Shown here: positions 1,114 through 18,897 of the stretch, piece by piece
Position numbering within the stretch: the first letter of the stretch is position 1
Layout of the letters: each line of letters begins with the position of its first letter
Assembly (NCBI GenBank): GCA_044892505.1
Contig: CM097882.1
Location: 25,730,001-25,794,000, forward strand
Length of the DNA: 64,000 bases
Source: Schmidtea nova
Lineage: Eukaryota
Reading direction: 5' to 3'
Notes under the pieces: generated by a model
Seen by the model: only the letters and a program-made list of their open reading frames with translations
What the model was told of the DNA's origin: nothing
The model's database searches: none
Made by a program: the position numbers and the translations under genes

Positions 1114-1384
1114 GTGTTGTGTCGGACCAATTGATGACGGAATTCTTTTTTCCTGTGTTCAGTGCTGAAAGAGGTGCTGTTATGTGAGATGCGTTTTTAA
1201 TGAATCTATGGCAGAAGTTGACGATGCCTAAAAAGCTACGTAGTTGTGTCACGGTGGTTGGCAGGGAAAAGCTGCGGATTACGTCAAGTCTTTCGGGGAA
1301 AGGTTCACAACCAGTAGATGAAAGTATATGGCCAAGGAATCTGACGCGTTCTTGAAACAAGCTACATTTGTTTATGTTTATCTG
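1114..1384 (-). pseudogene. 3' part of the RT / RT-RNase H connection of Gypsy element A, truncated at about 1114
   Basis: KCSLFQERVRFLGHILS...LRSFLGIVNFCHRFIKNASHITAPL. Removing element B and one TSD copy restores the in-frame read RHNLQININKCSLF with 14291 onward. Confidence 0.9.
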
Positions 1385-2427
1385 TGTTAGAAGATGGGCG
1401 TAGAATAAAGGTTTTAAAATTAAAACATTATACAGTAGGAAATGGAAGATACAGGATAAATATACATGTGGATCAGATGGCAATGACAATTCAATAATCA
1501 ATGGAAAATATCAAATTCAACGACATTATATGATGATATTTTACTGTTGATCTCATTTGACTTTTCTTTTATTATATGATGACTATCTGGCAATTTTTAT
1601 TTTTATGGGATAATTTTATTTTGTTTCTGTTAATAAAATTTGTTGACAATTAATTTTTGTAATGACAATTTATCAGCATGACAATTTATAATTTGACAAT
1701 TTATCATTTGTGATATTGCGAACATTTATTGGCATTTTTATGGTGATGGACAAAATTTTATATAATTTTGAAAAAATATTTTGTGTTGAAAATATTTTAT
1801 GTAAATTAATTTTTTAACTATTTGGAAAATGGATTATATTTTCATTTATATTTTAATATTTTAATTCAATAAATAATAATAATAATAAAATAAATAAATA
1901 AATAGTACAGGTTGTTTAAATAAATTAAAAAAATAAATAAATTACTGTTTGTTTAAATAAATTATATTTCTGACCTACAAGGTCAGGAAAATGAAATAAT
2001 ATCTCAAGGTTAAAAAATAATTTTGAAAACAATTCTGTTTTGAAAACAACTCTATTTTCAAAAACAATTTCAATCAACTCAAGAGGCAAAATAACAATCA
2101 TTATTGACAGATTAAGTGCCTTAAAATTTAGTATATAAACTGACTGATTTTTCAGTTAAATGACCCATAAAATCTTTGCGTAAGAAGAATTTCATAGTTG
2201 TTATCGACTATTGAAATAATAATTTCGAGCATACAAGATATCGAGCTCAGAAGGCATTCACACATACACACGCATACATATATATTTACACATTATAGGA
2301 ATAACATTGTGAATCTGTAATATTTTTTAGGTAATTTGTATTTGTTGTATTTGAATAAAATCTTTGAACCAGTATTATCTTATTTATTTATATAAGATAC
2401 CAAGTTGAGATTCTGGGAACCTCAACA
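1385..2427 (+). repeat. 5' LTR of element B
   Basis: Starts TGTTAGAAG, ends CCTCAACA; matched 13248-14290 wherever compared by eye. Confidence 0.97.
2132..2359 (+). promoter_or_regulatory. Putative LTR promoter and processing signals: TATATAAA (2132), Inr-like TCAGTT (2152), splice-donor-like AG|GTAATT (2331), AATAAA (2354)
   Basis: Motifs in this order, with counterparts in the diverged solo LTRs near 18.5-18.9, 21.6-22.0 and 28.6-28.9 kb. TATA-Inr spacing is shorter than canonical. Confidence 0.5.
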
Positions 2428-2429
2428 TT

Positions 2430-2447
2430 TGGTGCCGCGAACCGGGA
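2430..2447 (+). promoter_or_regulatory. Primer-binding site, tRNA-Phe-like
   Basis: TGGTGCCGCGAACCGGGA 2 nt after the 5' LTR; complementary to a tRNA 3' end ...UCCCGGUUCGCGGCACCA. The tRNA identity (Phe) is inferred. Confidence 0.7.
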
Positions 2448-2628
2448 ATAAATTAAAGTGAATAAATCAATTTGGGGGATAGGAATTGAGATCAGAGGGA
2501 TATTATATATTGGGATTATTTATAAATATAAAAAATTATTGGACATTAAATTTTTGAGATAATAGTGAAGTAACATTGATAATCAACCCGAAATAATTTA
2601 TAATTTGAGAAACCGAATAGTATATAGA

Positions 2629-5600
2629 ATGGCGCAAAATAATGAAAATAATGATAATATAAGACATATTTGGCAAAATAGAGATGAGGATAATAATAAC
2701 CGTAACATTTTGATAAAAACATTACCCATAGAGCATTATAGGGGTGAACCTGAAAAATTTGATGATTTTTTCGATGAAATTGCTCAGTGTGCAGAAGCTT
2801 GTGGATGGACAAGAGATGAATTAAAAAGAAGAATACCGTTATATTTAAAGGGGTATGCATTACAAGCATATAATAATTTAGAGTGTAAGGGTAGAAATTG
2901 GGAAGATTTAGTTGATAATTTGAGAGGTGAAATAGTAATCGAGCGAGATTTACAAAAGATAAATGTACAAATATTTCGAAATAGATATCAAGGGAGCAGA
3001 GAAACAATTGGAGAGTATGTTTATAATTTAACTGAATTAGCTCGAAAGGCCTTCGGTGTGGGAGAACATACTACAAGACTAATTGAGGATCAATTTTGGA
3101 ATGGTATCCAAAAACATCTATACAAATCTTTGATCATGGTAGAATATGAGAATTTAAATGAGTTAGTACAAAAGGCACGAAGAATTGAAGCAATACAGAG
3201 GGATAGATTTAGTTCTGTGATTGATGCAGTAGAAATTCAGGAAATTGAAAAAGAAAAAACCAAGTCAAACGATAAAGATGATAACATTCCTTGGGAGGAG
3301 ATGAAGCAGCTATATTTGAATTATGTTAAAAATAGGAGAAAGACTAGTCCAAGTCCGAGTCGTAGTTTTGACAACAATAATAGATTTAATAGTCCGAGAG
3401 GCAGATCGAATAATCGAAATAATGATCATTTGGAATTTAATGATAAAAATACTTATGTGGGGAATTATAGAGATAATTATTATAATCGAGATAGTAGGGG
3501 TCGAGGAAACTATAATAGAGATGGTCGTTTTAGAAATAGTGGGTACAATAGAAATAATCGTTTTAACGATAATCCAAGCAACAGGAGTAATTATTTCGAA
3601 TATACCCGAACAAATCGATTTACCGAAAATAGAAATAGTGATAATAGAAACAATTTCGAAATAAATAGAAACAATTATAGAGGACGGAGAATGAGTCCCA
3701 CTCGACAAACTTTTGATAGAGATAGACGATCGAGTCCGTTTAGTAACGATGGGAGAGATAAAGTTAATTTTCGCGGAGAAATAAGATGCTTCAACTGTCA
3801 GAAATATGGCCATATGGCAAAAGCATGTAAAAATGCACGAGTCGAATCTCCAAATAGAGTTCAATTTAAGAAAGAGCCTGAAATTAAACAAATAAATAGT
3901 ATGGAGGTTAAAGAGTCGAATAATGAAATTGAGATGCTGAGAGATGAATTACAAGAATTTAAAACAAAATATGAGAGATTAATCGAAAGAAATAAAATTA
4001 ATGTTTCGATAAACGAATTTAAAACTTTCACCAATGAAGTTAAGATAGATAATGAAGAGTTGAGACAGCAAAGAGAAAGAGATGAACAGTTTTTTGCAGA
4101 ATTAGATAGACAGAATACTTTGAGACAGGAATTAGAGGAATCCTTGAGAAATTATCTAGTTGATGATAATGAAGTTTTGAGAATATTAAATAAAATTCAT
4201 GTGGAAGGAATAAATCTGGAGAATCTGAGAAATTTGATACCATCATTAGTAAAGAAACAAAGAGTAACCCAATTATTTGAATTGGAAATTGAAATTAAAG
4301 AGATGTTGAAATGTTATAGCGATTATGTTCGAAAAAACGAAAGATTACAGGAGCCACTAGAAATTACATTAGAAACAAGTGATAAAGATACACCTAGAAT
4401 AATTGTCCATAAACAAGGGGTACATGCGTGTACAAAGGTAAAAAAGATGAAACAAATAGCCAGAGCAAATTGGTATGCCGATCTAGGAATAAATGATGAG
4501 ATAATATTGCATTTTTCTGGGATGAAGATGCAAAACGAAGATTGTTTAATGGATTATGGGATAAACGCCAGTGAAAATAACGTCATAACAGTTTCAATAA
4601 AAAGTGGTTTAGGAGTAGCCAACAAGAAAATTTCAAAACTAAGCCCAGACAAAGAAGATAAGGAAGAGACCGCGAGAGGAGCTATAGGAGGTATAATGAC
4701 CTTTACGTTGGAGGAAAAAAGACTCCCAAAATTAAAGAATAATAACATTGCTGAAAAACTGAAAGAAATTGCAAACAAAACGTCAACGAAAGATAAGGAC
4801 GTTGATGTACTAGTAGAGTTAATAAAAATCATGTATCCTAAAGTATATGAACACACAGGATCTCCATCATTTATTATTAATATATATAAAAAAATTGAAG
4901 TTATAGAGTCAGAGATTAAAGGATTAACAAAGCAAGAAGCGGATGAAGGCGAAGTTTTAGATATTTTATTTACTACTGGAATTGATGAAAATAGAATTAT
5001 AACAGCAATTGCGTATCTTATTTATAGATCAGAGGATGTTCTGAAGATGAAACCAAAGAAATTAAGTAAAATTGCTAAAAGGATATTTACAAGGTTACAA
5101 AATAATGTGATACCTTGGATACATGCAAATGGAGGATGGGAAATCTTAAGAGGAAAAGATGAATCAATGGAGATAAGCGCAGAACAACAATGTACTAATG
5201 ACAAAGAAATTGAAAGAAAATTGAAGAAAATAATAGATAAAACGACGAAGAAATCAGGGAAAAGTGATCATAAATCATTTATATCCACAATAATAGTGAT
5301 GATAGCAATATTATTAAGTATATTAAAAGGGTGTACGGGCATGATAGCATACGACTGTCAGAACCCGAAATGGGGACAAAAATATTCACTATTAGATATA
5401 GAAAACTGTCCAGAAGCGAACCCGATTAACTTAATTACAACCGAACCTAGATTATATCATGTGTATCAGGAATCAGATTTTATACATACCGAAGCGAGAG
5501 AATGTATAATAAGATATTCAGAAGAGGCTTTTGTATGTCACAGCATAGCGCGGACAATCTTAAGGCCCTCATTTACACCGGATACTATTACGATAACTCC

Positions 5601-8600
5601 ACAAGAATGTGAACATGCATTTCAATCAAAAAAGATAAAAATACATGAAATTGAATTAAAAGCACAGATAGGTGCACGTGTAAAACAACGAGTTGATGTA
5701 GTTGGATGGTCTTCACATGGTGGATATTGTCAAGGTGGAGAATACAAGATATGGGGACATACTATAAAAAATGCCGTTGTGAGAAGAGAATATATTGTTG
5801 AACTTAGACAATTTAAGGCATCTTTCGATAGCGTAACACAAAAGATGATGACATACCCATTCTGTACATCAAAAGAAATAAGCTGTGATACCGGAGAATC
5901 AATTGTAATATATAAAGTCGATTCGTATGAATGTCCTTTGACCAAATTAAAATCACTAAAATTCATGACTATAAGAGGCAAACAATTTACAAACTCAGAG
6001 TCAACAAAAATAAAAGATAGAAAAAGAAAGACAATAGTAGTTCAAGAAAAAGATACACCAACGATATACATGACAGAATCTTCAGGAGAAGCAATGAGAT
6101 TTGTAAGCAAAGGAGAAAGTGTAAAGTGTGGGAGATCAATAATACAGACCAATTATAAGGGTATATATCTAAGCAAAGATGAAATAAAAGATGCAAAACT
6201 AAAAGTCAATAAATACGATGTCAAACTTTCATCCTACTTTAATAATAAGATAGATTACTTTTACCATCACCAACTAATGCAACTAGATAGAGTATACCAA
6301 GAAACTATTATAAATGATTGTAAGCTTAATCGAGAAATCTTAAGAACAAAGATGGCACTAGCTATCACAAACCCAGACTTAATGGCCCCAATGCTTTTTT
6401 CAGAAAGAGGCGCTTTTGCAAGAGTTGTAGGGGAAGTCATACAAACATTTCAATGTAAACCAGTCAGTGTAGCACTAGCCACAAACAAACAATGTACAAA
6501 CGAATTACCTGTCATATATAAAGGAGAAAGAGTTTACCTACAACCAATTACACGAATACTAACAGACAAAAACTATACACCAAAGAAGATTGATAAATGT
6601 ACAAATTTATTGGATCCTTTATATCAACTAGATGATGAAACATGGATAACAATGTCAGATAAGAAGGTAGCAATAACACCTTTGAAACTTGAAATGACAG
6701 AATTAGATAAAAAACTCGAATTCTTCGAAGTAAATGATTTTGATAGCAATGGGTTATATTCAAAAGAAGCTATAGAAAGCGCAAGAAAACACTTATTATT
6801 CCCCAATGAAAAAGAAAAGGTATTAACAGTTATCGCCAGTAAAATAATAGAGAACAGCCATGATGGAAAATATAACTTTGATATACTTCTATCAAAAGAA
6901 CACTTTAAAAAGGTAGTTTACAAAGTTTTATATAGTATTTGGGGATATTTTGCAATCTTAGGTAACACATTCTCAACTATACTTGGCATTTACTATTCAG
7001 TTGCATTACTGAAAATGATATGTTCATCATTAGTATCACTTAGACAATTAAGGCAGGTATTTGGTAATTCATTCAAAATGTTGGCTTGTTTATGTCCATT
7101 TGTTGCGAAATACTTGATAACAGCAAAACATGATAAAGATATTAAAAGGATAATTAGAAAAACGGAAGAAGACAGATTAATGGACGAAAATGTAAATGAA
7201 GAAAATAATCATACAAGTGAGTCTGAAAACATTGAACAACCACAAGGGGGACCATACATCATACATATGGAGCAATTGAAAAGTCTACAAAACGAGATTG
7301 AAGTCAAAATACCTGTGGAAAAACATAGTGGTAATATATTCACAAAAAAACCTAAAAGAATATATGGATGCTATGGAATAGAAGAAGGAGAAGAAGCAAA
7401 TGGAATGAGACCAAGAACTCAAATAAAGATAAATAATCAAACTATAAATGCGTTAGTAGACACAGGTGCAGCAGCATCATTAATAGAAAATGAGTTATTA
7501 ACTGAACAACAACGTCAAAGCATTAGACCGACAAATGATGAACTAGTATCCCTTTCTTCACACACAATACCTATCAGAGGAAATATCGAACTTACAGTTC
7601 ATTTCGAAAATCAAAGAATAAACCATGTGTTTAGGGTAGCAAATATATGCCAAAGAAAATGTATACTAGGTATAGACATCCTTAAAAAATTGAAAGGGTA
7701 TGTAATAGATCTATCAGATAATAAAATAAAAAGAAAGATAAATAAGACCCACCGAAGTGATATAAACATTTACGCAATGGAAGAATTTGAATTGGAATAC
7801 GAAAGTGATAATATTATACCTATAAAAGTAAATGTTCAAAGCGAAGATACATACGTTTTCGAACCAAATACTAACATCGCAAAAAATAACAATATTATGG
7901 TAGCAAATGAATGTGTAATGCCAAAGAAAGGTGTAATCCCAGTAAGAATTGCAAACTTTGAGAATAAAAAGGTTAAAATTCATAAAGGTACAAAGTTGGG
8001 ACAATTATCTAAATGTGATTTGAACAAACATGAAATAGGAGAATTATACATCATGGGAAATGACCTCGAAAAGAGCTTCGAACAAAATTCAAAAAATAAT
8101 ATTAAATTCTATGATAAAATTAAAATAACTAATAATTATTTGACCGCAACACAACTACAACAGTTACAAACCTTAATTGATGAGTATAATGATGTTTTTG
8201 CCAAACATGAATTTGACCTAGGAGATACTGATATTATAAAACATGTAATTGATACAGGAAATGCCAGACCATTAAAACAAAGACCTTATGTAACTCCTTA
8301 TAAACTTAGGGAAGAAATAAAAAGACAAATCAACGAATTAAAAGGAGCAGGAGTAATTAGACAAAGTTTTTCACAATGGGCATCACCTATAGTACCAGTT
8401 AGAAAGAAAGATGGTGAGATAAGGATGTGCATCGATTATAGAAAATTAAACGAAGTTACAGTTAAAGATTCATATCCGTTCCCTAAAGCACAAGAACAAT
8501 ATGATAAACTTAGAGGTGCTAAATATTTTACAGTTATAGACGCAAATAAGGGATATATGCAAATTCAAATAGAAGAAGGAGATATAGAAAAATCAGCATT

Positions 8601-11550
8601 CGTGATTGAAGATGAGTTATATGAATTTTTAAGATTACCATTCGGGATGGTAAATGCACCAGCAACATTTCAAAGATTGATGAACACCATACTAATAGAT
8701 GTTCAACACTGTGCCGTTTATATGGATGACATACTGATAGCATCAAAAACATTCGAAGGACATCTTCAAGACATAAAAAATGTATTAGAAAGATTTCGAA
8801 AATCTAAACTAAAAATCAAACCTACCAAATGTAAATGGGCAGAATCGTCTGCATTATATTTAGGACATATTGTATCAATTGATGGCATCATTCCAAATCC
8901 AGATAAGATTAAAACAGTACAACAGTTTCCTATTCCAAAAAATGTAAAAGAAATACAAGGATTCTTAGGTTTAACAGGATACTATCGAAAATTCATAGAA
9001 AATTATGCTAAAATTGCAGCCCCATTAATTGAATTAACAAAGGGAGTAAAAACAAAAGAAGATGGGAGAAAAACACAAATAGTACAAAAAATAAATAAAG
9101 ATAATGGAAAGTCACAAAAAATATGGACGCAACGACAACAAACTGCTTTTGAGCAACTCAAAGAAAAATTAGTAACAGCTCCAATATTAAGATACCCGGA
9201 TTTCACAAAACAATTCATCATTATGACGGATGCTAGTGGAAAAGCTGTAGGAGCAGTCTTAGGTCAGGAAGAAGAAAAGGGCAAAGATTACGTCATAGCA
9301 TATGCAAGTAAAACATTAAAAAGTGCGGAAACCCGATATTCAACTATAGAAAAAGAATGTTACGCAATAATGTTCGCACTTAGACAATTCAAACAATACA
9401 TATATGGATCAGAAGTATTAATACGAACGGACCACAAACCATTAGAAGGATTATGGAAACATAAAGATACATCAAGTAGATTACTAAAATGGGCAATGAA
9501 AATACAAGATATGCATGTAAAAATTATTTATAAACCTGGTCGAATAAACAAAAACGCAGACGCATTATCACGAATACCAGAATTAAGCGTATTAGAAATT
9601 TTTGCCGTGGTGGCTGAAAATCCAATAGATATATACCAAGAACAAATAGACGATTCTGAACTTAGTAAAGTAAGAGAGGAAGTTATTAAAGGAAGAAATA
9701 ACAAATTTAAATTAAGCAAAAATGTATTAATGATGGAAGATATTACAGGTAAACAACTTATAGTAGTACCACAGAAGTTGAAACAAATACTTTTATTACA
9801 ATATCACGATGGTGCACTCGGAGGACATCTTTCAGCTAGAAAAACAGCAAATAGATTATTACAAAAATACTATTGGGAAAATCTTAAAAATGATGTAAAG
9901 CAATGGTGTAACTCATGCACAATATGTGCCACTCGAAAAAATACGGGAACAAGAACAAAAGCCCCACTCCATCCAATACCGGTAATAAATTCGCCAATGG
10001 AATTATGCGCTATGGATTTTTTATGCAAATTACCCGTCACAATTAAAGGTAACAGACATATCTTAGTCTTCAGTGATTATTTTACAAAGTGGGCAGAAGC
10101 TTTTCCGACTAAAGATGAGACCGCAGAAACAGTAGCCAAATTATTAACAGAAAAAATAATATTTAGAATTGGGACACCAAAGAAGTTACTCACAGACAGA
10201 GGAAAGAATTTCATGAGTGAAATAATTCAAAGACTAGCAAATATCTTTGACATACAGAAAATAAATACGACTGCATATCACCCTCAAACAGATGGCCTAG
10301 TTGAACGATTTAATGGCACACTATTAAATAGGTTATCAGTTTTTGTAAACAAAAATCAAAACGACTGGGATGAGTATGTAAATCAATGTACCTACATTCA
10401 CAATATAACCCCTAATGAGACAACAGGATACTCTCCATATTATTTAATGTATTTACGTGAACCAATTACACCAATTGATACAACATTTGAACCGAAAATA
10501 TCACAATACTTAGATACCCCGGACTATGTCACTTTAATGCAAGAAAGACTACAAGAAGTTTACAAAATAGCTGATCTAAAAATTAAATTTCGCCAAGAAC
10601 AATATAAAGATGGATATGACAAAACAACAAAACCCCATAATTTCAAAGTAGGAGATAAGGTTAGACTTATGTCACCTCAAATAGGAAAAGGTAAAACAAA
10701 GAAATTAGCAAGACCATATAAAGGTCCATATGAAGTTGTAAAATTAACGCATGAAAACTTACATTTACAAAAACACAAAAATGATGACCCAATTATTGTC
10801 CATGTCAATAGATGTAAACTAGCAGAGAACGATTTACCAACAATAAGATCACACAGATACAATCTAAGGTCCAAACCGCAAAATATATTGATGATATCAA
10901 TAACCATTCTCACAATTATCAACATAGTCAATTCAGAATTAATTAACAATGATGATGTTACAATAAAAATAAATTACAATAACATTATAATCGTTGATAT
11001 AAAGAAAGACCTTATAAACCAGTTCTATTTAAGATTTACCAATGGTTCATACACTAAAATTGTAGAAAAAACGAAAGATAATAGAAAAAGTTATATCGCC
11101 AAATATGAAAATTTACAAGCTAATACAATATACTATTTTTGCTTAGAAACACCAATATGGGGATTTAAAAAGACTCAATGTCAAATATTAAAAACCGGAA
11201 ACCAAAAACCTACCACACCCATCACCAGATACATACCTCAAAGAATATTTAAAAATCCAAAACAACCTAAAATCTCAAAATCCCAAAAATGGATTAAAAT
11301 ACCAATAAATAAGCCCTCAACAATAATAAACAACTGGGAGGAATTCCAAAATTTATACCATCATCAACAAAAACCGTTATATAAAAGATGGCCGTTTTAT
11401 ATTATAATATTCAGTATAATATTACTAACAATAATAATAATATGGATGAGCACGCAAACCTATAGAAAGTATAAGTGGAAGAGACAGCGTTATCGGAGTC
11501 ATCTCGTCCAATACGTCCCAGGGAGATATACTTTATCTACATTATGTTAA
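2629..11550 (+). CDS. Single polyprotein: Gag(CA, CCHC NC)-Ubl-Bcl-2-like-Env (class III fusion glycoprotein)-PR-RT-RH-IN-membrane protein. True ATG at 2629
   Basis: CFNCQKYGHMAKAC (3787); LHFSGMKMQNEDCLMDYGI; PWIHANGGW; IAYDC...YSLLDIENC; LVDTGA (7453); YMDD (8719); TDASGKAVGAVL; HDGALGGH...CNSCTIC; MDF/TDRG/VERFN; GPY; two hydrophobic signal-like segments and TM segments. Confidence 0.95.
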   Translation: MAQNNENNDNIRHIWQNRDEDNNNRNILIKTLPIEHYRGEPEKFDDFFDEIAQCAEACGWTRDELKRRIPLYLKGYALQAYNNLECKGRNWEDLVDNLRGEIVIERDLQKINVQIFRNRYQGSRETIGEYVYNLTELARKAFGVGEHTTRLIEDQFWNGIQKHLYKSLIMVEYENLNELVQKARRIEAIQRDRFSSVIDAVEIQEIEKEKTKSNDKDDNIPWEEMKQLYLNYVKNRRKTSPSPSRSFDNNNRFNSPRGRSNNRNNDHLEFNDKNTYVGNYRDNYYNRDSRGRGNYNRDGRFRNSGYNRNNRFNDNPSNRSNYFEYTRTNRFTENRNSDNRNNFEINRNNYRGRRMSPTRQTFDRDRRSSPFSNDGRDKVNFRGEIRCFNCQKYGHMAKACKNARVESPNRVQFKKEPEIKQINSMEVKESNNEIEMLRDELQEFKTKYERLIERNKINVSINEFKTFTNEVKIDNEELRQQRERDEQFFAELDRQNTLRQELEESLRNYLVDDNEVLRILNKIHVEGINLENLRNLIPSLVKKQRVTQLFELEIEIKEMLKCYSDYVRKNERLQEPLEITLETSDKDTPRIIVHKQGVHACTKVKKMKQIARANWYADLGINDEIILHFSGMKMQNEDCLMDYGINASENNVITVSIKSGLGVANKKISKLSPDKEDKEETARGAIGGIMTFTLEEKRLPKLKNNNIAEKLKEIANKTSTKDKDVDVLVELIKIMYPKVYEHTGSPSFIINIYKKIEVIESEIKGLTKQEADEGEVLDILFTTGIDENRIITAIAYLIYRSEDVLKMKPKKLSKIAKRIFTRLQNNVIPWIHANGGWEILRGKDESMEISAEQQCTNDKEIERKLKKIIDKTTKKSGKSDHKSFISTIIVMIAILLSILKGCTGMIAYDCQNPKWGQKYSLLDIENCPEANPINLITTEPRLYHVYQESDFIHTEARECIIRYSEEAFVCHSIARTILRPSFTPDTITITPQECEHAFQSKKIKIHEIELKAQIGARVKQRVDVVGWSSHGGYCQGGEYKIWGHTIKNAVVRREYIVELRQFKASFDSVTQKMMTYPFCTSKEISCDTGESIVIYKVDSYECPLTKLKSLKFMTIRGKQFTNSESTKIKDRKRKTIVVQEKDTPTIYMTESSGEAMRFVSKGESVKCGRSIIQTNYKGIYLSKDEIKDAKLKVNKYDVKLSSYFNNKIDYFYHHQLMQLDRVYQETIINDCKLNREILRTKMALAITNPDLMAPMLFSERGAFARVVGEVIQTFQCKPVSVALATNKQCTNELPVIYKGERVYLQPITRILTDKNYTPKKIDKCTNLLDPLYQLDDETWITMSDKKVAITPLKLEMTELDKKLEFFEVNDFDSNGLYSKEAIESARKHLLFPNEKEKVLTVIASKIIENSHDGKYNFDILLSKEHFKKVVYKVLYSIWGYFAILGNTFSTILGIYYSVALLKMICSSLVSLRQLRQVFGNSFKMLACLCPFVAKYLITAKHDKDIKRIIRKTEEDRLMDENVNEENNHTSESENIEQPQGGPYIIHMEQLKSLQNEIEVKIPVEKHSGNIFTKKPKRIYGCYGIEEGEEANGMRPRTQIKINNQTINALVDTGAAASLIENELLTEQQRQSIRPTNDELVSLSSHTIPIRGNIELTVHFENQRINHVFRVANICQRKCILGIDILKKLKGYVIDLSDNKIKRKINKTHRSDINIYAMEEFELEYESDNIIPIKVNVQSEDTYVFEPNTNIAKNNNIMVANECVMPKKGVIPVRIANFENKKVKIHKGTKLGQLSKCDLNKHEIGELYIMGNDLEKSFEQNSKNNIKFYDKIKITNNYLTATQLQQLQTLIDEYNDVFAKHEFDLGDTDIIKHVIDTGNARPLKQRPYVTPYKLREEIKRQINELKGAGVIRQSFSQWASPIVPVRKKDGEIRMCIDYRKLNEVTVKDSYPFPKAQEQYDKLRGAKYFTVIDANKGYMQIQIEEGDIEKSAFVIEDELYEFLRLPFGMVNAPATFQRLMNTILIDVQHCAVYMDDILIASKTFEGHLQDIKNVLERFRKSKLKIKPTKCKWAESSALYLGHIVSIDGIIPNPDKIKTVQQFPIPKNVKEIQGFLGLTGYYRKFIENYAKIAAPLIELTKGVKTKEDGRKTQIVQKINKDNGKSQKIWTQRQQTAFEQLKEKLVTAPILRYPDFTKQFIIMTDASGKAVGAVLGQEEEKGKDYVIAYASKTLKSAETRYSTIEKECYAIMFALRQFKQYIYGSEVLIRTDHKPLEGLWKHKDTSSRLLKWAMKIQDMHVKIIYKPGRINKNADALSRIPELSVLEIFAVVAENPIDIYQEQIDDSELSKVREEVIKGRNNKFKLSKNVLMMEDITGKQLIVVPQKLKQILLLQYHDGALGGHLSARKTANRLLQKYYWENLKNDVKQWCNSCTICATRKNTGTRTKAPLHPIPVINSPMELCAMDFLCKLPVTIKGNRHILVFSDYFTKWAEAFPTKDETAETVAKLLTEKIIFRIGTPKKLLTDRGKNFMSEIIQRLANIFDIQKINTTAYHPQTDGLVERFNGTLLNRLSVFVNKNQNDWDEYVNQCTYIHNITPNETTGYSPYYLMYLREPITPIDTTFEPKISQYLDTPDYVTLMQERLQEVYKIADLKIKFRQEQYKDGYDKTTKPHNFKVGDKVRLMSPQIGKGKTKKLARPYKGPYEVVKLTHENLHLQKHKNDDPIIVHVNRCKLAENDLPTIRSHRYNLRSKPQNILMISITILTIINIVNSELINNDDVTIKINYNNIIIVDIKKDLINQFYLRFTNGSYTKIVEKTKDNRKSYIAKYENLQANTIYYFCLETPIWGFKKTQCQILKTGNQKPTTPITRYIPQRIFKNPKQPKISKSQKWIKIPINKPSTIINNWEEFQNLYHHQQKPLYKRWPFYIIIFSIILLTIIIIWMSTQTYRKYKWKRQRYRSHLVQYVPGRYTLSTLC

Positions 11551-11761
11551 ATTAAAATACCCAATCATAAACGATCTATTATATTATCCAATAATATTTA
11601 AAAAATTATTTTACCCAATAGAAACTGATCAAATTTTACTATATAAATGTCCAATAATTTATAAAAATCACCCATATCTAAATAGATATTATATTGCAAA
11701 TAGGGGTAATCTCTATCTTTGCATTAATATATATATTCTATTAATTATTCTTTTTAGAAAA

Positions 11762-13360
11762 ATGAATTCAAAAGAGCCATCAACTTCGAACCCAACCAAT
11801 CCAAAAACAATGAAATACACACAAATATACACATGCAAGACATACAAACACCCACTAACATTCTACAAAGCATTACAAAATAACATAAAGGCAGATGGAG
11901 AAGAACTCACAATTAGAAAATACCCACATCAAGTATGTATACCCAACGAGTTCAAGGTAGACACAGAAGAAAGAGAGATGTACCTAGTTAAGTTTAACAT
12001 AGCAAAGAGAACAAAACTTAGAGACATTATAGGCTATTTTGAACCAAGCCAGAATGTAGATAAAGATACCAAAGAAGGCAAAAGAATCCCACATAGGATA
12101 GTGATTCACGCCACGAAAACAGAACTTACAATAAAATTCAAAGAAACAACGTTAGCCACCATAAGTAAAGCAACAGCGGTGTTTAAGACAATAAAATATA
12201 GAAAAATGGCGAATGATTTTAATAACATCACGATACAAATTCATAATATACCTTGCGTAATGGCTATAGAAATCCTATATGTTCCAAAAATAAACAATCC
12301 TTTTGAAAAATCGGAAATAATTATGGCTGAGATCAGGATGAATGAAGATTTTATAGAAAACAAAACACCATTCACAAAGAAAGTATTGACGATCGAGGAA
12401 AGAAGAGAGAAAATAGTTTTTATGGATGTAAAAACAGTAAAAGATTATAATCATCAAATAAAACCCATAGATATTCATATCAGAAAATATAATGGAGACT
12501 GTGTATTTAAAACGAAAATTACCCCAAGGACTAAAATACAAATGGACAAAATAGAGAAAGATTCAATATTGGGGAATATGGATGAATTCGAAGCACTAAT
12601 AGAAATAAAAAAACATTTATACAATAAAATAATTATCGGATTTGACATTATGGAAAAATTAAGAAGTATATACATCAGTTTAGATGATGTTTTAGGAATA
12701 AGAGAAATGTCAAATAATGTCTATACGAAAACTTTTGTAAAGAATGTCCCGGAAGATAAGATAAGATTATCTAATCTTGCTTTCCAGATCATCAAACTCA
12801 AAAGCGATTTACGGAGAAATAAAAAACTCAACGACATTCTACTTAAACCAGAGCCATTTAGCGTACAAGACACCTGTATGATAGTCAGGATTCTATACTT
12901 GATAACTGAAAACGACTGGGAAAATTACATAGAACAGCAAATGAAAGAAATAACTAAGAAACCCAGAAATGAGAGCACAAGCAATCAAACGAATCAAACA
13001 GAGGATGAGGACGAAGTGCAATTCATCAAAGAAGAGCGACCAAATGTTGAACTTATGGACACAATAGAAGATGAACTAGGACCAGAGCCAATGATCACTA
13101 TAGAGGACACACAAGAAGAAAAATATATCACATTAATATATGATAAAAACATTAAAATGACAACAGTAACAATAGATGAAGATGAAATAGATGTATTCTT
13201 TGTAAAAAAAGGTTATGAGGACATAACCTTAACGCCCCAGGGAGTAATGTTAGAAGATGGGCGTAGAATAAAGGTTTTAAAATTAAAACATTATACAGTA
13301 GGAAATGGAAGATACAGGATAAATATACATGTGGATCAGATGGCAATGACAATTCAATAA
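11762..13360 (+). CDS. Accessory ORF2 of element B (532 aa, unknown function); its 3' end lies inside the 3' LTR
   Basis: Long open frame with the element's codon bias, preceded by a splice-acceptor-like TTATTCTTTTTAG ending at 11757; stop at 13360 lies inside the LTR that starts at 13248. Confidence 0.85.
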   Translation: MNSKEPSTSNPTNPKTMKYTQIYTCKTYKHPLTFYKALQNNIKADGEELTIRKYPHQVCIPNEFKVDTEEREMYLVKFNIAKRTKLRDIIGYFEPSQNVDKDTKEGKRIPHRIVIHATKTELTIKFKETTLATISKATAVFKTIKYRKMANDFNNITIQIHNIPCVMAIEILYVPKINNPFEKSEIIMAEIRMNEDFIENKTPFTKKVLTIEERREKIVFMDVKTVKDYNHQIKPIDIHIRKYNGDCVFKTKITPRTKIQMDKIEKDSILGNMDEFEALIEIKKHLYNKIIIGFDIMEKLRSIYISLDDVLGIREMSNNVYTKTFVKNVPEDKIRLSNLAFQIIKLKSDLRRNKKLNDILLKPEPFSVQDTCMIVRILYLITENDWENYIEQQMKEITKKPRNESTSNQTNQTEDEDEVQFIKEERPNVELMDTIEDELGPEPMITIEDTQEEKYITLIYDKNIKMTTVTIDEDEIDVFFVKKGYEDITLTPQGVMLEDGRRIKVLKLKHYTVGNGRYRINIHVDQMAMTIQ

Positions 13361-14290
13361 TCAATGGAAAATATCAAATTCAACGACATTATATGATGAT
13401 ATTTTACTGTTGATCTCATTTGACTTTTCTTTTATTATATGATGACTATCTGGCAATTTTTATTTTTATGGGATAATTTTATTTTGTTTCTGTTAATAAA
13501 ATTTGTTGACAATTAATTTTTGTAATGACAATTTATCAGCATGACAATTTATAATTTGACAATTTATCATTTGTGATATTGCGAACATTTATTGGCATTT
13601 TTATGGTGATGGACAAAATTTTATATAATTTTGAAAAAATATTTTGTGTTGAAAATATTTTATGTAAATTAATTTTTTAACTATTTGGAAAATGGATTAT
13701 ATTTTCATTTATATTTTAATATTTTAATTCAATAAATAATAATAATAATAAAATAAATAAATAAATAGTACAGGTTGTTTAAATAAATTAAAAAAATAAA
13801 TAAATTACTGTTTGTTTAAATAAATTATATTTCTGACCTACAAGGTCAGGAAAATGAAATAATATCTCAAGGTTAAAAAATAATTTTGAAAACAATTCTG
13901 TTTTGAAAACAACTCTATTTTCAAAAACAATTTCAATCAACTCAAGAGGCAAAATAACAATCATTATTGACAGATTAAGTGCCTTAAAATTTAGTATATA
14001 AACTGACTGATTTTTCAGTTAAATGACCCATAAAATCTTTGCGTAAGAAGAATTTCATAGTTGTTATCGACTATTGAAATAATAATTTCGAGCATACAAG
14101 ATATCGAGCTCAGAAGGCATTCACACATACACACGCATACATATATATTTACACATTATAGGAATAACATTGTGAATCTGTAATATTTTTTAGGTAATTT
14201 GTATTTGTTGTATTTGAATAAAATCTTTGAACCAGTATTATCTTATTTATTTATATAAGATACCAAGTTGAGATTCTGGGAACCTCAACA
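13248..14290 (+). repeat. 3' LTR of element B
   Basis: Same termini and length as 1385-2427; preceded by a short purine tract AGGGAGTAA. Confidence 0.97.
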
Positions 14291-15480
14291 TCTGTAAGTT
14301 GTGACGGTTCAATATATCAAGGATCGTGTGTAAATCGTTTTTGTGGCTTTCTCGATCCGGGGACGCTATGATGATATCGTCAAGGTATGCGAAAGTGTGA
14401 GGGACATCGCGAAAAATTGTGTCCATGAAACGTTGTGGGGACTGAGCTGCGTTTCTAAGACCAAAAGGCATGAACATGTATTCAAAATTCCCAAATGGTG
14501 TAGTGACAGCCGTTTTGTGGACGTCGTCCGTATGGATGGGAAATTGGTGGTATGCTTTCGAGAGGTCTATAGTTGAGAACACTGTAGATTGTGAAAAGCG
14601 TGTTATTAAATCTTTAATGAGTGGCATTGGGTAGGCGTCGTGGACTGTTACTTGGTTGAGCTGTCGATAATCTCCACAGGGTCTGAATGACCCGTCTTTT
14701 TTTGTTACTACGTGTATTGGCAAAGCCCATGGTGAAGATGAACGACGTATAATGCCTGCGTTTTCTAGACTAACAAATTCAGCTTTGACTGCGTCGAGTT
14801 TCGTGGAAGAGAGAGGTCTGGCTCGATTGTGTTGTGGTATGCATGGTAATGTGTGAATATAGTGAGTCGATAGGGTAGTGGGTGGTATGGTATCGGATTT
14901 AGTTATGAGGTTTGGATATTTGGTTGAAATTAATTTGATCATGTCATCGATCGTATCTAGATTGGCTGATTGGTCGATGTCCAACGTGTTTTTATCGTTT
15001 TCCATCGTGGAATCTTGATGAATCGAGTTGAGTTGTGTCGGTGTAAATGTCTGCGTTGAAATTGATGTTACATTTGACGATGAAATTGTCGGTATATTGG
15101 CAATGTCTTGTTTTACAGTGAACAACTTACGATTTTTGCAATCTACCATGATGGATTCGTTGCTTAAAAAATCGGAGCCTAATATTGGGTGGATAGTGTC
15201 TGCTATGTGGAAGGTGTGAGGGAAAGTTGAGTTTAATGTTGATATTGTGAATGAGAGTTTTTTTGTTCCCAAAAATTGGATCGGTGTGCTGTTAGCGGCC
15301 AAGGCAGTGAACGAAGATTTGAAGTCTGGTGTGAAAGTTGTTGGAAGGATTGAAAATGACGAGCCCGAATCTATGAGAAAATGAATTGATGAGCTGGAGT
15401 CGAAGTCTGCTTCAACAGTGAAGATACTGTTGATCGCAAGGACGCTGCCTGAAAATCCAGGGTTGACAGACAGTGGCGCT
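14291..15480 (-). pseudogene. Pol (protease + RT) of element A, 5' portion
   Basis: FLIDSGSSFSILP, ILGSDFL, SSSPWALPIHVVTKKDGSFRPCGDYRQLN, PFGLRNA, YLDDIII. The ORF-track tail (MLRFPESQ...) is read-through into the LTR. Confidence 0.9.
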
Positions 15481-15490
15481 AGTTTTTTTT
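15479..15490 (-). promoter_or_regulatory. Putative -1 ribosomal frameshift site at the gag-pol junction of element A
   Basis: Minus strand AAAAAAC immediately followed by the gag TAG; the pol frame continues into the protease. Confidence 0.6.
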
Positions 15491-16389
15491 GGGAGAATTG
15501 AAATTGTTTTTGTCGTATGATTTATTTGAGGAACGGTTTACAAAAGTGCAACCTGAAAGGCATTTTTGTGCATGTATACCGAGATATTGTGATAGATGCA
15601 AATAGAAATGATCCTCAAAGTGGAAGGAGGGTTTGGCCATGAACATCCTATATGGCATGTTCTTGCGTCGGATGAGAATTTCTTGTGAAAAAAACAAGTC
15701 AGAGGGGGGAAAGAATTTGGTTTATCGTTTCTTTGGGTGTGTGTAGTTAGCTGAGAGGAGTTGAGTATCGCGTCGACTGTTTTTGTCAGAGAAGATATCT
15801 GTTCCTGTAATGAAGGGTCGGAAACTGATGCGATGGTAGTTGGTGCGTTTCGGATGGGGGGTCGAGTAACCAACTTATCAGCAATTTTTGCAAGGTGAAA
15901 AGGATCATCGGAATCCACGACGAGAAGTGAGGTCTGGATGTGATGTGGAAGAGCTGTTAAAAATTGATGGCATAAGAGAGCAGTGTTTTTTGATAAACCG
16001 GTGTGGGCGGCCTCGAGTTCGCGTACTAGTTGCGATAAAAAGGATGATGGGGGTTGACCGGCGTATGGGGTGGGTTTTGATAACTTTTCGATCGCTGAAG
16101 TGCGCGTGGGTGAATATTTTTTTTCTATGACCGCTTTGATTGATTCATAAAGGGTTTCTGAGTTTAATGCGTCAGCTATTTGTGAGCCTAATTCTGACAT
16201 TAACTCGTCGGGTATTGCATCCAGCAGAAGATCTTGCCTAGACTTGGGATTGGCTCTAGTGCGCGATTCAAAAATGCGGAACCAAGATGATGGTGTGCCG
16301 TCTGCGTCTAAAAATATCAGTTGAGTGCGACCTATGGACGTGGGAGGGTTATGATCATTGTTAGTTTTGGCACCGCCTCTTGCCCGCAT
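15479..16389 (-). CDS. Gag of element A with two CxxHxx(F/Y)xxxAxxCxxxC knuckles (second one frameshifted)
   Basis: CFFHKKFSSDARTCHIGCSW; the second knuckle CIYH / QYLGIHAQKCLSGCTF is split across frames and ends SPKKN*. Confidence 0.85.
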
Positions 16390-16829
16390 GAAGAGTGTTA
16401 TTATTGCGTTTGTTGGGACTGAAAGAGGATCTGTGATGGGAACTCCGTTATTTAAAATAAAGAAGTCGTTGTGTTCTATTAAAAAAAACGTTTAATATCG
16501 TTAAAAAAGTTTGTCGTGGTAATTTTAACTGAGTGAATAATATTTTTGTGGCGTACAGTGATGTTGAGTAAGCCGTCATGAAGGGTAAATGGTTGTGAAC
16601 AGGTAGAGGAAACTGTTGTAGTGTTGGTTATAGGAGTATGAAAATTATTATTAAAATAATTATTAAAATTTTTATTGAATATTTTATTAAAATTATTATT
16701 AATATAAATGGAGTAATTAGATGAATTTAAATATTCACATAATAAATTCAAAAAGCTTACGTTTGTCACTTCTGACACCAATTGTAGGAATGCTAAAAGC
16801 AAATAAGATTTTATTAATAGAAATTGATC

Positions 16830-17261
16830 TCCAATTGACAAGTTGGTCTTTGGCAACCGGAAATCCTGACCGATGATAACAAGAGTTGAAATGAGCAAGC
16901 TCCATGACAGTCCGTATTGATTGATTTCTGGTGCTGGCGAATAATCGTTTAATCGAGATTGATTGTGATCCAATGTATTGATTTGTAAATTTTTTGAATT
17001 ATACATTTCAGATTTGTCTGGATAGTATATTAATATTGATCCAGTTGTTGTCAAGCATCTTCCAGTTTGTACGGCTTCTTTACGCATTCCAGCAGCGAAA
17101 CATTTCTGCAATCTACGGAACTGGCAATTGTTTCTTCTTTGAATATCGACTACACAATCTCCTCTAGAGTAGAACTGATAATTGTTGTCATTTGATGAAA
17201 ACGAGTCGCTGTGGATGTCTTGAGTGAATGGGTATATCGAATCATTGTTAACAGCTTGCAT
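16830..17261 (-). pseudogene. Degenerate nuclear receptor fragment (second C4 finger plus T-box, possible LBD start), NR2-like
   Basis: RGDCVVDIQRRNNCQFRRLQKCFAAGMRKEAVQTGR. Two zinc-ligand Cys are replaced and the first finger is not recognisable. Confidence 0.75.
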
Positions 17262-18729: not shown

Positions 18730-18897
18730 AGTTGAAATTGATATATATATATATATATATATTCATCTGTGAGGTAATTGTTTAATTTTTATCAAATTTG
18801 TAAATTATTATAATTTAAATAAAGTTTTGAAAAGAACCAGTCTTTGACTTATTTATTTATATAAGTTCATCAAGTTGAGATTCTTGGAACCTCAACA
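18300..18897 (+). repeat. Diverged solo or partial LTR related to element B (left boundary unresolved)
   Basis: Ends CAAGTTGAGATTCTTGGAACCTCAACA; shares TATA/TCAGT, CGAGCTCAG, (CA)n(TA)n and GGTAAT motifs with the B LTR. Confidence 0.75.

What the first reader, a model, noticed from the sequence alone, without database searches (positions are those of the whole stretch)
5341..7120. Chuvirus-G/gB-like class III fusogen placed between gag and pol
Seen: IAYDC...YSLLDIENC at the start; ARVVGEVIQTFQC...CTNELPVIYKGERVYLQPITRIL; GLYSKEAIESARKHLLFP; then a TM region. Known: this motif series resembles chuvirus-type glycoproteins captured by BEL/Pao elements and the gB-like env of nematode elements. 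Inference: here it is carried by an element whose Pol looks Ty3/Gypsy, and it sits upstream of the protease. That suggests an independent capture and leaves Pol as the cytoplasmic tail of Env until cleaved.
Basis: partly seen in the sequence, partly recalled or inferred. Interest (0 to 1): 0.86.

Follow-up and report, generated by a model that had tools for sequence, protein, structure and literature searches.

The report
Retrovirus-like element with chuvirus-type envelope
An intact, very recently inserted Ty3/gypsy retrovirus-like element in an animal genome carries a chuvirus-type membrane-fusion glycoprotein in frame between its gag and pol genes. This layout was already described in nematodes, bryozoans and flatworms, so it is a new member of a known kind.

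Summary
Window 5341-7119 encodes a 593-aa glycoprotein that matches Pfam PF24664 (Monjiviricetes fusion glycoprotein, E 1.7e-81). It aligns full-length with chuvirus glycoproteins. With a 104-sequence alignment it folds at pLDDT 90.6 into a class III fusogen. The best solved matches are all herpesvirus gB, and the best predicted viral matches are chu-like virus glycoproteins.

It lies inside one uninterrupted 2981-codon ORF: Gag, a Bcl-2-like module, a signal/TM segment, G with its TM anchor, then PR-RT-RH-IN and a small membrane module. The element spans 1385-14290. It has identical 1044-bp LTRs and a 4-bp target duplication, and it is nested in an older pol remnant. Pol is Ty3/gypsy, not BEL/Pao.

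At least 21 diverged metagenomic relatives keep G fused to Pol or Gag. Their G domains form one clade, apart from the stand-alone chuvirus-type glycoproteins.

The gag-env-pol order with class III Env in Ty3/gypsy elements is published (Sacco 2022; Chary and Hayashi 2026). Processing of the membrane-spanning polyprotein is inferred, not demonstrated.

Side findings are a conserved Bcl-2-like module before Env and an exonuclease-like ORF3. The host phylum was not determined.

The parts
1385..2427 (+). 5' LTR (TG...CA ends), with short internal tandem repeats
   Evidence: 1044-base exact match to 13248-14291 (alignment).
2429..2446 (+). Primer-binding-site-like stretch starting TGG just after the 5' LTR. 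The tRNA was not identified.
   Evidence: Sequence context printed. No tRNA gene in the window to compare with.
2605..11550 (+). Single uninterrupted ORF of 2981 codons (first ATG at 2629): Gag, middle region, G, PR-RT-RH-IN, C-terminal membrane module
   Evidence: Zero internal stops.
2629..3840 (+). Gag: capsid-like part and CCHC zinc knuckle (3787-3828)
   Evidence: Pfam zf-CCHC. Weak match to the dArc2 capsid 6taq, E 0.0027, over residues 41-188.
4951..5148 (+). Bcl-2-like module (BH1 to BH2 region), directly upstream of the Env signal segment
   Evidence: Pfam Bcl-2 E 4e-4, below cut-off. phmmer against PDB gives more than 60 Bcl-2/Bcl-xL chains. A profile of the window plus 3 relatives gives E 5.7e-6 and 93 Bcl-2-family sequences. 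The same module lies upstream of G in 6 relatives.
5278..5340 (+). Hydrophobic segment 1: internal signal or signal-anchor of the glycoprotein. It sits where stand-alone relatives have their N-terminal signal peptide.
   Evidence: Kyte-Doolittle peak 2.37. A hydrophobic segment lies within 40 aa before G in 15 of 20 polyprotein relatives.
5341..7119 (+). Chuvirus-type class III fusion glycoprotein (ectodomain to about 6939, membrane anchor 6940-7041, start of the tail)
   Evidence: PF24664 E 1.7e-81. AF2 pLDDT 90.6. Foldseek matches to gB at E 3e-14 and to chu-like virus G at E 2e-41.
7408..7701 (+). Retropepsin (aspartic protease)
   Evidence: Pfam RVP E 3e-9.
8398..9510 (+). Reverse transcriptase (8398-8874, YMDD motif) and RNase H (9124-9510)
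   Evidence: Pfam RVT_1 E 8e-36 and RT_RNaseH E 5.5e-37. Ty3 RT 4ol8 E 4e-77.
9766..10284 (+). Integrase: H2C2 zinc domain and catalytic core. A GPY motif lies further downstream.
   Evidence: Pfam Integrase_H2C2 E 4.5e-19 and rve E 2e-11. Ty3 Gag-Pol 7q5b is aligned through this region.
10876..11547 (+). C-terminal module with two hydrophobic segments (10885-10929 and 11389-11451) around a stretch of about 150 aa. No known family.
   Evidence: No Pfam hit. No tblastn match in relatives L001-L003.
11762..13360 (+). ORF3, 532 aa: exonuclease-like accessory gene that runs into the 3' LTR
   Evidence: tblastn to ORFs downstream of pol in L001 (E 4.5e-19) and L003. Those ORFs carry Pfam RNase_T above cut-off. 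Alignment.
13248..14290 (+). 3' LTR, identical to the 5' LTR. A short purine-rich stretch lies just upstream.
14291..14294 (.). Target-site duplication TCTG (the other copy is at 1381-1384)
   Evidence: Flank sequences printed.

Best explanation
This is a complete, recently integrated Ty3/gypsy (Metaviridae-type) endogenous retrovirus-like element of 12.9 kb. Its envelope gene is a chuvirus-type class III fusion glycoprotein lying in frame between gag and pol.

Shown:
- the element's bounds, its identical LTRs and its target duplication;
- the single ORF;
- the identity and fold of G;
- the Ty3/gypsy identity of Pol;
- the conservation of the G-Pol or Gag-G fusion in a diverged lineage.

Inferred mechanism:
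- The genomic RNA is translated into one membrane-spanning polyprotein.
- The hydrophobic segment before G acts as an internal signal and puts the G ectodomain into the ER lumen.
- The G anchor returns the chain to the cytosol, so Gag and Pol both stay cytosolic. The last module after integrase dips into the membrane again.
- Host signal peptidase would free the N-terminus of G, and the element's own protease would cut on the cytosolic side.
- The released trimeric G would then serve as the particle's fusion protein, as in the published gag-env-pol elements.

The element belongs to that known kind. It is not evidence of a new capture.
For: - Element anatomy. Both flanks match one older RT on the opposite strand, and the two matches meet at the same residue. 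This shows a clean insertion.
- The ORF is intact over 2981 codons.
- G: PF24664 E 1.7e-81. It has a full-length match to a named chuvirus glycoprotein, P0033, at E 1e-41, and further named chuvirus-like neighbours. pLDDT is 90.6. The top 50 PDB matches are all herpesvirus gB with probability 1.0 over about 620 columns. BFVD top hits are chu-like virus G, with TM up to 0.68. All 14 ectodomain cysteines are at conserved columns. There is no RxK/RR site in G.
- Pol: Ty3 7q5b at E 3.5e-110. Pfam gives the order PR-RT-RH-IN.
- Fusion conserved: 10 polyproteins of 2099-4029 aa with about 40% identity in G. They are co-linear with the window's ORF, and seven include Gag in the same ORF. Hydrophobic segments flank G in most relatives. 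All 21 polyprotein-borne G form one NJ clade.
- Literature: GAG-ENV-POL Ty3/gypsy elements with HSV/gB-type Env. Their ectodomain is flanked 'by two transmembrane domains' in some cases (PMC13524379).
Against: - No transcript or protein data exist here, so translation as one polyprotein, the cleavage sites and the fusion activity are all untested.
- Flank charges fit the positive-inside rule for segments 1, 3 and 4 but are neutral for the G anchor.
- There is only one N-glycosylation sequon in the ectodomain.
- The NJ tree has no support values and is midpoint-rooted.
- The host phylum is unknown, so membership in the published nematode, bryozoan or flatworm clades rests on architecture alone.
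- Equal amounts of Gag, Env and Pol from one ORF is unusual for retroviruses.
Confidence: 0.75

Rival explanations
1. Env is made mainly from a spliced subgenomic mRNA, as in retroviruses and insect errantiviruses. Gag-Pol would come from a message lacking env, and the shared reading frame would be a by-product of tight packing rather than the expression route.
For: Retroviruses and Drosophila errantiviruses use spliced env mRNA (general knowledge). Some relatives have Gag in a separate, overlapping ORF upstream of G-Pol, for example L001, L005 and L004. The layout is therefore not rigid.
Against: The frame is kept open across Gag-G-Pol or G-Pol in more than 20 relatives that share only 25-45% identity. 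A signal-like segment sits exactly before G inside the ORF. No splice prediction or RNA data are available here.
Confidence: 0.25
2. This is a fresh capture of a chuvirus glycoprotein by a Ty3/gypsy element, independent of the published gag-env-pol lineages as well as of the BEL/Pao carriers.
For: Pol is Ty3/gypsy, not BEL/Pao. GAG-ENV-POL elements are reported not to be monophyletic in Pol trees (PMC13524379), so several captures or rearrangements are possible in principle.
Against: The window's G is only 22-28% identical to stand-alone chuvirus-type G but 38-50% identical to other polyprotein-borne G. All of those form one clade with no stand-alone G inside. That points to one old event shared by a lineage. 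The layout matches what is already published.
Confidence: 0.12
3. The glycoprotein no longer serves entry. It would be kept for another role, such as anchoring assembly at internal membranes or cell-to-cell transfer within the host, or it would be on its way to decay.
For: No activity data exist. There is only one N-glycosylation sequon. The element is endogenous.
Against: All family-conserved cysteines are kept and the fold is predicted with high confidence over the full ectodomain. The ORF is intact and the LTRs are identical, which indicates a very young copy. The anchor is conserved in relatives.
Confidence: 0.1
4. The arrangement is a chance juxtaposition or an assembly chimera of a non-retroviral chuvirus insertion with a retrotransposon.
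For: Chuvirus-derived insertions are common in animal genomes (PMC7642597, PMC10084718). The window has several N gaps.
Against: There is no N run inside 1385-14290. G is in frame with Gag and Pol within one LTR pair and a target duplication. The same arrangement appears in independent contigs from other samples.
Confidence: 0.02

Closest known systems
Non-canonical nematode endogenous retroviruses (Sacco, Lau, Godinez-Vidal and Kaloshian 2022, J Gen Virol 103:001739)
   Same: By its title, and as cited in PMC13524379, this describes a metavirus (Ty3/gypsy) that captured an RNA-virus glycoprotein gene, with env placed before pol. From my own memory of the abstract (unverified, the paper is not held), it describes one continuous gag-env-pro-pol ORF with chuvirus/nyamivirus-like Env. 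That is the window's layout.
   Different: The host of the window is not known to be a nematode. The published sequences could not be compared. I found no mention in the searchable literature of the Bcl-2-like module or the exonuclease-like ORF3 for that family. I could not read the paper itself.
GAG-ENV-POL Ty3/gypsy 'errantiviruses' of Nematoda, Bryozoa and Platyhelminthes (Chary and Hayashi, eLife 2026, PMC13524379)
   Same: Ty3/gypsy Pol, HSV/gB-type class III Env, env between gag and pol, an ectodomain sometimes flanked by two transmembrane segments, and many intact young copies.
   Different: The paper does not discuss single-ORF fusion or polyprotein topology. It does not mention Bcl-2-like or exonuclease modules. 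Clade membership was not tested here.
Anakin and other mosquito BEL/Pao elements with chuvirus-like glycoprotein (Dezordi et al. 2020, PMC7642597)
   Same: A Jingchuvirales-type glycoprotein carried by an LTR retroelement.
   Different: Those have BEL/Pao Pol. Here Pol is Ty3/gypsy and env is fused between gag and pol.
Glycoproteins of exogenous Jingchuvirales (chuviruses) and relatives, Pfam PF24664
   Same: The same protein family over the full length, with the same conserved cysteines.
   Different: Only 22-28% identity. The viral proteins are stand-alone, about 650-700 aa, with an N-terminal signal peptide. Here the signal is internal to a polyprotein and the tail continues into Pol.
Herpesvirus glycoprotein B (post-fusion structures)
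   Same: The best solved structural match, over about 620 aligned columns at probability 1.0. This is the class III fold with a long central helix.
   Different: 9-12% identity, TM-score only 0.4-0.45, and no sequence-level match. This is likeness of fold, not family membership.
Insect errantiviruses (gypsy, ZAM and others)
   Same: Env-carrying Ty3/gypsy elements with LTRs.
   Different: According to PMC13524379, these have an F-type Env placed after pol and expressed separately.
Bdelloid rotifer LTR elements with a DEDDy exonuclease ORF3 (Rodriguez et al. 2017, PMC5408684)
   Same: An exonuclease-type third ORF downstream of pol in an LTR retroelement.
   Different: That is a DEDDy type, whereas relatives here match RNase_T (PF00929). 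The window's copy lacks two catalytic-motif residues. The two were not compared directly.

Membership tests
Pfam PF24664 Monjiviricetes fusion glycoprotein (chuvirus-type G) | Score above the curated gathering cut-off over most of the profile | tested here: met
   274.6 bits against a cut-off of 27. The best stretch covers profile positions 240-600 of 653, in two matched stretches. Relatives match positions 5-632.
Pfam PF24664 Monjiviricetes fusion glycoprotein (chuvirus-type G) | Full-length homology to glycoproteins of named Jingchuvirales | tested here: met
   P0033, a named chuvirus glycoprotein, at E 1e-41 with query 2-589 aligned. P0095 and P0114 are also named.
Class III viral fusion proteins | Multi-domain fold shared with gB, rhabdovirus G and gp64, including the long central helix | tested here: met
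   pLDDT 90.6, with a helix at 296-343. Foldseek gives gB at E 3e-14 and probability 1.0. Chu-like, nyami-like and rhabdo-like G appear in BFVD.
Class III viral fusion proteins | Two internal hydrophobic fusion loops at the tip of the fusion domain | not tested
Class III viral fusion proteins | Homotrimer | not testable with these tools
Class III viral fusion proteins | C-terminal membrane anchor and no need for an internal priming cleavage | tested here: met
   Hydrophobic anchor at ORF residues 1446-1479 and no RxK/RR motif in G.
Ty3/gypsy (Metaviridae-type) LTR retroelements | Pol order PR-RT-RH-IN, with RT, RH and IN closest to Ty3-type enzymes | tested here: met
   Pfam order. Ty3 Gag-Pol 7q5b at E 3.5e-110 across RT-RH-IN, and Ty3 RT 4ol8 at E 4e-77.
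Ty3/gypsy (Metaviridae-type) LTR retroelements | LTRs with TG...CA ends and a 4-6 bp target duplication | tested here: met
   TG...CA ends and a 4-bp TCTG duplication. The criteria are as stated in PMC12440569.
Ty3/gypsy (Metaviridae-type) LTR retroelements | GPF/Y motif in the integrase C-terminal region. PMC12440569 calls it a hallmark, though some lineages lack it. | tested here: met
   A GPY motif is present downstream of the integrase core in the translation.
BEL/Pao carriers of chuvirus G (Anakin type) | BEL/Pao-type Pol (Pao peptidase and associated Pfam families) | tested here: not met
   No BEL/Pao family appears among the Pfam hits at E<=0.01. The hits are RVP, RT_RNaseH_2 and Integrase_H2C2. 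Which Pfam families mark BEL/Pao is my own knowledge.
Published GAG-ENV-POL Ty3/gypsy elements (nematode ERVs of Sacco 2022; Chary and Hayashi 2026) | Class III Env located between gag and pol of a Ty3/gypsy element | tested here: met
.
Published GAG-ENV-POL Ty3/gypsy elements (nematode ERVs of Sacco 2022; Chary and Hayashi 2026) | Host in Nematoda, Bryozoa or Platyhelminthes, and placement inside the published Pol and Env clades | not testable with these tools
   The host was not identified. The published sequences are not held.
Bcl-2 family (for the module at 4951-5148) | Pfam Bcl-2 score above the gathering cut-off | tested here: not met
   21.3 bits against a cut-off of 31.4. Relative P0009 scores 19.4 bits.
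Bcl-2 family (for the module at 4951-5148) | BH1-BH2 region homology, followed by a C-terminal hydrophobic tail | tested here: inconclusive
   The profile of 4 elements against PDB gives E 5.7e-6, and 93 hits are all Bcl-2 family. The conserved GGW motif is kept. A hydrophobic segment follows at 5278-5340. The N-terminal half (BH4/BH3) is not matched, and no structure was predicted.

The most novel reading that the evidence does not exclude
A subclade of these env-carrying Ty3/gypsy elements has captured a cellular Bcl-2-like module. It is placed between Gag and Env, and the hydrophobic tail that follows it doubles as the internal signal of the glycoprotein. Together with an exonuclease-like ORF3, this would make the element a retrovirus-like agent with host-manipulating accessory functions (cell-death control, RNA or DNA end processing). 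I could find neither described for gag-env-pol elements.
Probability: 0.35. Interest if true: 0.65.

Novelty: new member of a known kind. Interest (0 to 1): 0.4.

Why it matters
The finding adds a complete, apparently very young copy to the known group of invertebrate Ty3/gypsy elements that carry a class III envelope gene before pol. It has zero stops in 2981 codons and identical LTRs.

It also shows, from independent metagenomic contigs, that the in-frame fusion of Env with Pol, and often with Gag, is a conserved trait of a diverged lineage. This makes the polyprotein's membrane topology a concrete question for descriptive work on transcripts, peptides and structure.

The Bcl-2-like module upstream of Env and the exonuclease-like ORF3 are the parts most likely to be new. 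Retroelement-encoded cell-death regulators would be of interest to virologists and transposon biologists alike.

Tried and rejected
**Approaches that gave nothing useful**
- The sequence search of G against solved structures gave only chance EF-hand hits.
- The single-sequence AF2 model was useless at pLDDT 32. It was replaced by the alignment-based model.
- Sacco et al. 2022 could not be read. Supplements of PMC13524379 are not held, so PBS types could not be matched.

**Host identification failed**
- Exact look-ups of ORF1 and ORF3 were not on record.
- There are no Rfam or tRNA hits in the window.
- The FKBP-TPR gene search returned unnamed proteins. Only one exon maps.
- The metagenome scan returned only two unnamed contigs.

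**Ideas checked and dropped**
- A ubiquitin-like stretch seen by eye at about ORF residues 590-670 has no Pfam support. I dropped it.
- ORF3 and the C-terminal module have no Pfam or PDB match of their own.
- The chance-juxtaposition or chimera reading was considered and rejected (see rivals).

**Not done**
- Fusion loops were not mapped.

- My recollection of the Sacco abstract is marked as memory wherever it is used.

Full report
**The observation**

The + strand carries one uninterrupted ORF from 2605 to 11550. It has 2981 codons, and the first ATG is at 2629. The stretch 5341-7119 (593 aa) starts right after a strongly hydrophobic segment (5278-5340) and ends after a second one (6940-7041).

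This 593-aa piece matches Pfam PF24664, 'Monjiviricetes_fusion, viral fusion glycoprotein', at E 1.7e-81. The end coordinate is off by one base only.

**The element around it**

- Direct repeats of 1044 bases at 1385-2428 and 13248-14291 are 100% identical.
- With TG...CA ends, the LTRs are 1385-2427 and 13248-14290. They are flanked by a 4-bp duplication, TCTG.
- A TGG-initiated primer-binding-like stretch follows the 5' LTR.
- The sequence on both sides of the element matches one older reverse transcriptase on the opposite strand. The two separate matches meet at the same residue. The element is therefore a clean, nested insertion.
- No N run lies inside it.
- Related LTR fragments of 75-91% identity occur elsewhere in the window, so the family has other members nearby.
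- The main element has no breaks: no stops in ORF1, and ORF3 is open.

**Domain order of ORF1**

1. Gag, with a CCHC knuckle and a weak match to the Ty3-derived dArc2 capsid.
2. A middle region of about 480 residues that ends in a Bcl-2-like module.
3. Hydrophobic segment 1.
4. The glycoprotein, with its anchor.
5. Retropepsin, RT, RNase H and integrase.
6. A module of about 220 residues with two more hydrophobic segments and no known family.

A further ORF (11762-13360) follows and runs into the 3' LTR.

**What the glycoprotein is**

- A sequence search of solved structures found nothing meaningful, and a single-sequence model was useless.
- An exhaustive profile-free search found 1200 relatives at E<=1e-3.
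  - The nearest are long polyproteins at 38-42% identity.
  - They are followed by many stand-alone proteins of about 650-700 aa at 22-28% identity, aligned end to end.
- Named members of the stand-alone group are glycoproteins of chuviruses and chuvirus-like viruses, plus a beetle genomic copy.
- In a 104-sequence alignment, all 14 cysteines of the window's ectodomain fall in columns that are at least 90% conserved.
- With that alignment, AlphaFold2 gave mean pLDDT 90.6.
- Foldseek against the PDB returned only herpesvirus gB in the top 50. The best E was 3e-14, with probability 1.0 over about 620 aligned columns and TM about 0.42-0.45.
- Foldseek against predicted viral structures was led by chu-like virus glycoproteins (E 2e-41, TM up to 0.68). 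Qin-, xinmo-, nyami- and rhabdo-like G came next, and gB further down.

The protein is therefore a chuvirus-type class III fusogen by sequence family and by fold. Fusion loops and trimer formation were not examined.

**What Pol is**

- The best solved relative is the Ty3 Gag-Pol polyprotein (7q5b, E 3.5e-110), aligned from RT through integrase. Ty3 RT (4ol8) comes next.
- Pfam gives RVP, RVT_1, RT_RNaseH, Integrase_H2C2 and rve, and no BEL/Pao family.
- A GPY motif follows the integrase core. PMC12440569 names this motif as a hallmark of Metaviridae/Gypsy integrases.

**Is the fusion real and conserved?**

- Ten polyproteins of 2099-4029 aa from metagenome assemblies combine PF24664 with PR, RT, RH and IN.
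- BLASTP shows them co-linear with the window's ORF. Seven (P0009, P0010, P0011, P0013, P0014, P0016, P0029) also have Gag in the same ORF. In others, Gag is a separate overlapping ORF.
- A hydrophobic segment lies within 40 residues before G in 15 of 20 relatives, and at the end of G in 19 of 21.
- In a neighbour-joining tree of 110 G domains, all 21 polyprotein-borne G plus three short fragments form one clade. None of the 85 stand-alone proteins falls inside it. The tree has no support values and is midpoint-rooted.
- This fits one old capture inherited by a lineage.

**How it most likely works**

This part is inferred, not shown.

- There are four hydrophobic segments, an even number, so Gag and Pol can both be cytosolic while the G ectodomain and the small last module face the lumen.
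- Flank charges agree with this for segments 1, 3 and 4. They are uninformative for the G anchor.
- Segment 1 sits exactly where stand-alone relatives have their signal peptide.
- I therefore propose co-translational insertion of a polytopic Gag-G-Pol precursor. Signal peptidase would release the N-terminus of G, and the element's protease would cut on the cytosolic side.
- The main rival is a spliced env message. It cannot be excluded without RNA data.

**Comparison with what is known**

- Chary and Hayashi (eLife 2026, PMC13524379) report env-carrying Ty3/gypsy elements across metazoans, with F-type or HSV/gB-type Env.
  - Elements of Nematoda, Bryozoa and Platyhelminthes carry only HSV/gB-type Env, in the order GAG-ENV-POL.
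  - That order was first reported by Sacco et al. [quoted passage not shown] - Some Env ectodomains are flanked by two transmembrane domains.
- I could not read Sacco et al. From memory only, its abstract describes one continuous gag-env-pro-pol ORF with chuvirus/nyamivirus-like Env, which is this layout.
- The kind is therefore known. The window adds a member.
- Whether it belongs to a published clade could not be tested, because the host phylum stayed undetermined. The window does hold animal gene fragments: a nuclear-receptor zinc finger and an FKBP-TPR gene.

**Side findings**

Bcl-2-like module:
- ORF residues 783-848 match Bcl-2 weakly in Pfam (E 4e-4, below cut-off). In the PDB they match Bcl-2 and Bcl-xL chains almost exclusively.
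- The best PDB hit is 6v4m. According to PMC7456325, that is the Trichuris suis BCL-2.
- A profile of the window plus three relatives raises this to E 5.7e-6, with 93 Bcl-2-family hits.
- The same profile finds the module just upstream of G in three more relatives. It is absent from the others.

ORF3:
- It is homologous to ORFs downstream of pol in two relatives that carry an RNase_T exonuclease domain above cut-off.
- The window's copy lacks the glutamate of the first motif and the histidine of the last. It is probably not an active exonuclease.
- A DEDDy exonuclease ORF3 is known in bdelloid LTR elements (PMC5408684).
- I found no report of either module in gag-env-pol elements. The literature search was limited.

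**Verdict**

This is a new member of a known kind, of moderate interest. The Bcl-2-like module is the most novel lead.

Noticed in passing
window 4951-5148 (module), with relatives L004:4457-5005, L005:6001-6450, L006:2859-3401: A Bcl-2-like module (BH1 to BH2, with a conserved GGW) lies inside the polyprotein, just before the Env signal segment. It is found in 7 elements in all and is absent from the other relatives. The best solved match of the window's piece is the Trichuris suis BCL-2 (6v4m).
   Followed up: partly
window 11762-13360; L001:19559-21610; L003:12411-13970 and 14249-15685: ORF3 downstream of pol is homologous to RNase_T-type exonuclease ORFs of relatives. The window's copy, and one of the two L003 copies, lack residues of the catalytic motifs. 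L003 carries two paralogues in tandem.
   Followed up: partly
window 10876-11547: After the integrase, the same ORF continues into a signal-like segment, about 150 residues with an N-glycosylation sequon, and a strong membrane anchor with a basic tail. This looks like a small second membrane protein of unknown family. It is not conserved in sequence in L001-L003.
   Followed up: partly
window 1145-1384 and 14292-15302, minus strand: Both flanks of the element belong to one older Ty3/gypsy-like pol remnant (34-37% identity to the element's RT), so the element is nested in an older retroelement. The pieces were compared apart and not joined.
   Followed up: partly
window 18783-18897, 21602-21719, 21901-22019, 28599-29169 (minus), 39459-39505: There are fragments 75-91% identical to parts of the element's LTR. 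Two of them border an N gap. They are probably solo or partial LTRs of related family members.
   Followed up: no
window 45035-45637, minus strand: A further reverse-transcriptase fragment (Pfam RVT_1, E 1.6e-12), unrelated in position to the element.
   Followed up: no
window 16482-17261 (minus) and 63028-63771 (minus): These are host gene fragments: a nuclear-receptor C4 zinc finger, and an FKBP domain whose nearest database protein (88% identity) also has TPR repeats. They show an animal host but did not reveal the phylum.
   Followed up: partly
window 1662-1710, 1878-1964, 2020-2069 (and the same places in the 3' LTR): Short tandem repeats lie inside the LTR: units of 15-16 nt about 3 times, 37 nt about 2.2 times, and 17 nt about 2.9 times. 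They are possible regulatory repeats.
   Followed up: no
relatives P0006, P0007, P0010, P0011, P0012, P0016 (proteins); P0009 and L005:10817-12652: Several relatives carry one or more extra retropepsin-like domains after the integrase, and two carry ankyrin repeats. The lineage seems to pick up extra modules freely.
   Followed up: no
L001:2334-5753: The contig with relative P0006 also holds short, fragmented bacterial-type genes (MacB, ABC ATPase, YknX-like, TetR). This could be horizontal transfer into a eukaryote or a chimeric metagenome contig. Another relative (P0015) is labelled as a Flavobacteriaceae MAG protein in NCBI, which is surely a binning error.
   Followed up: no
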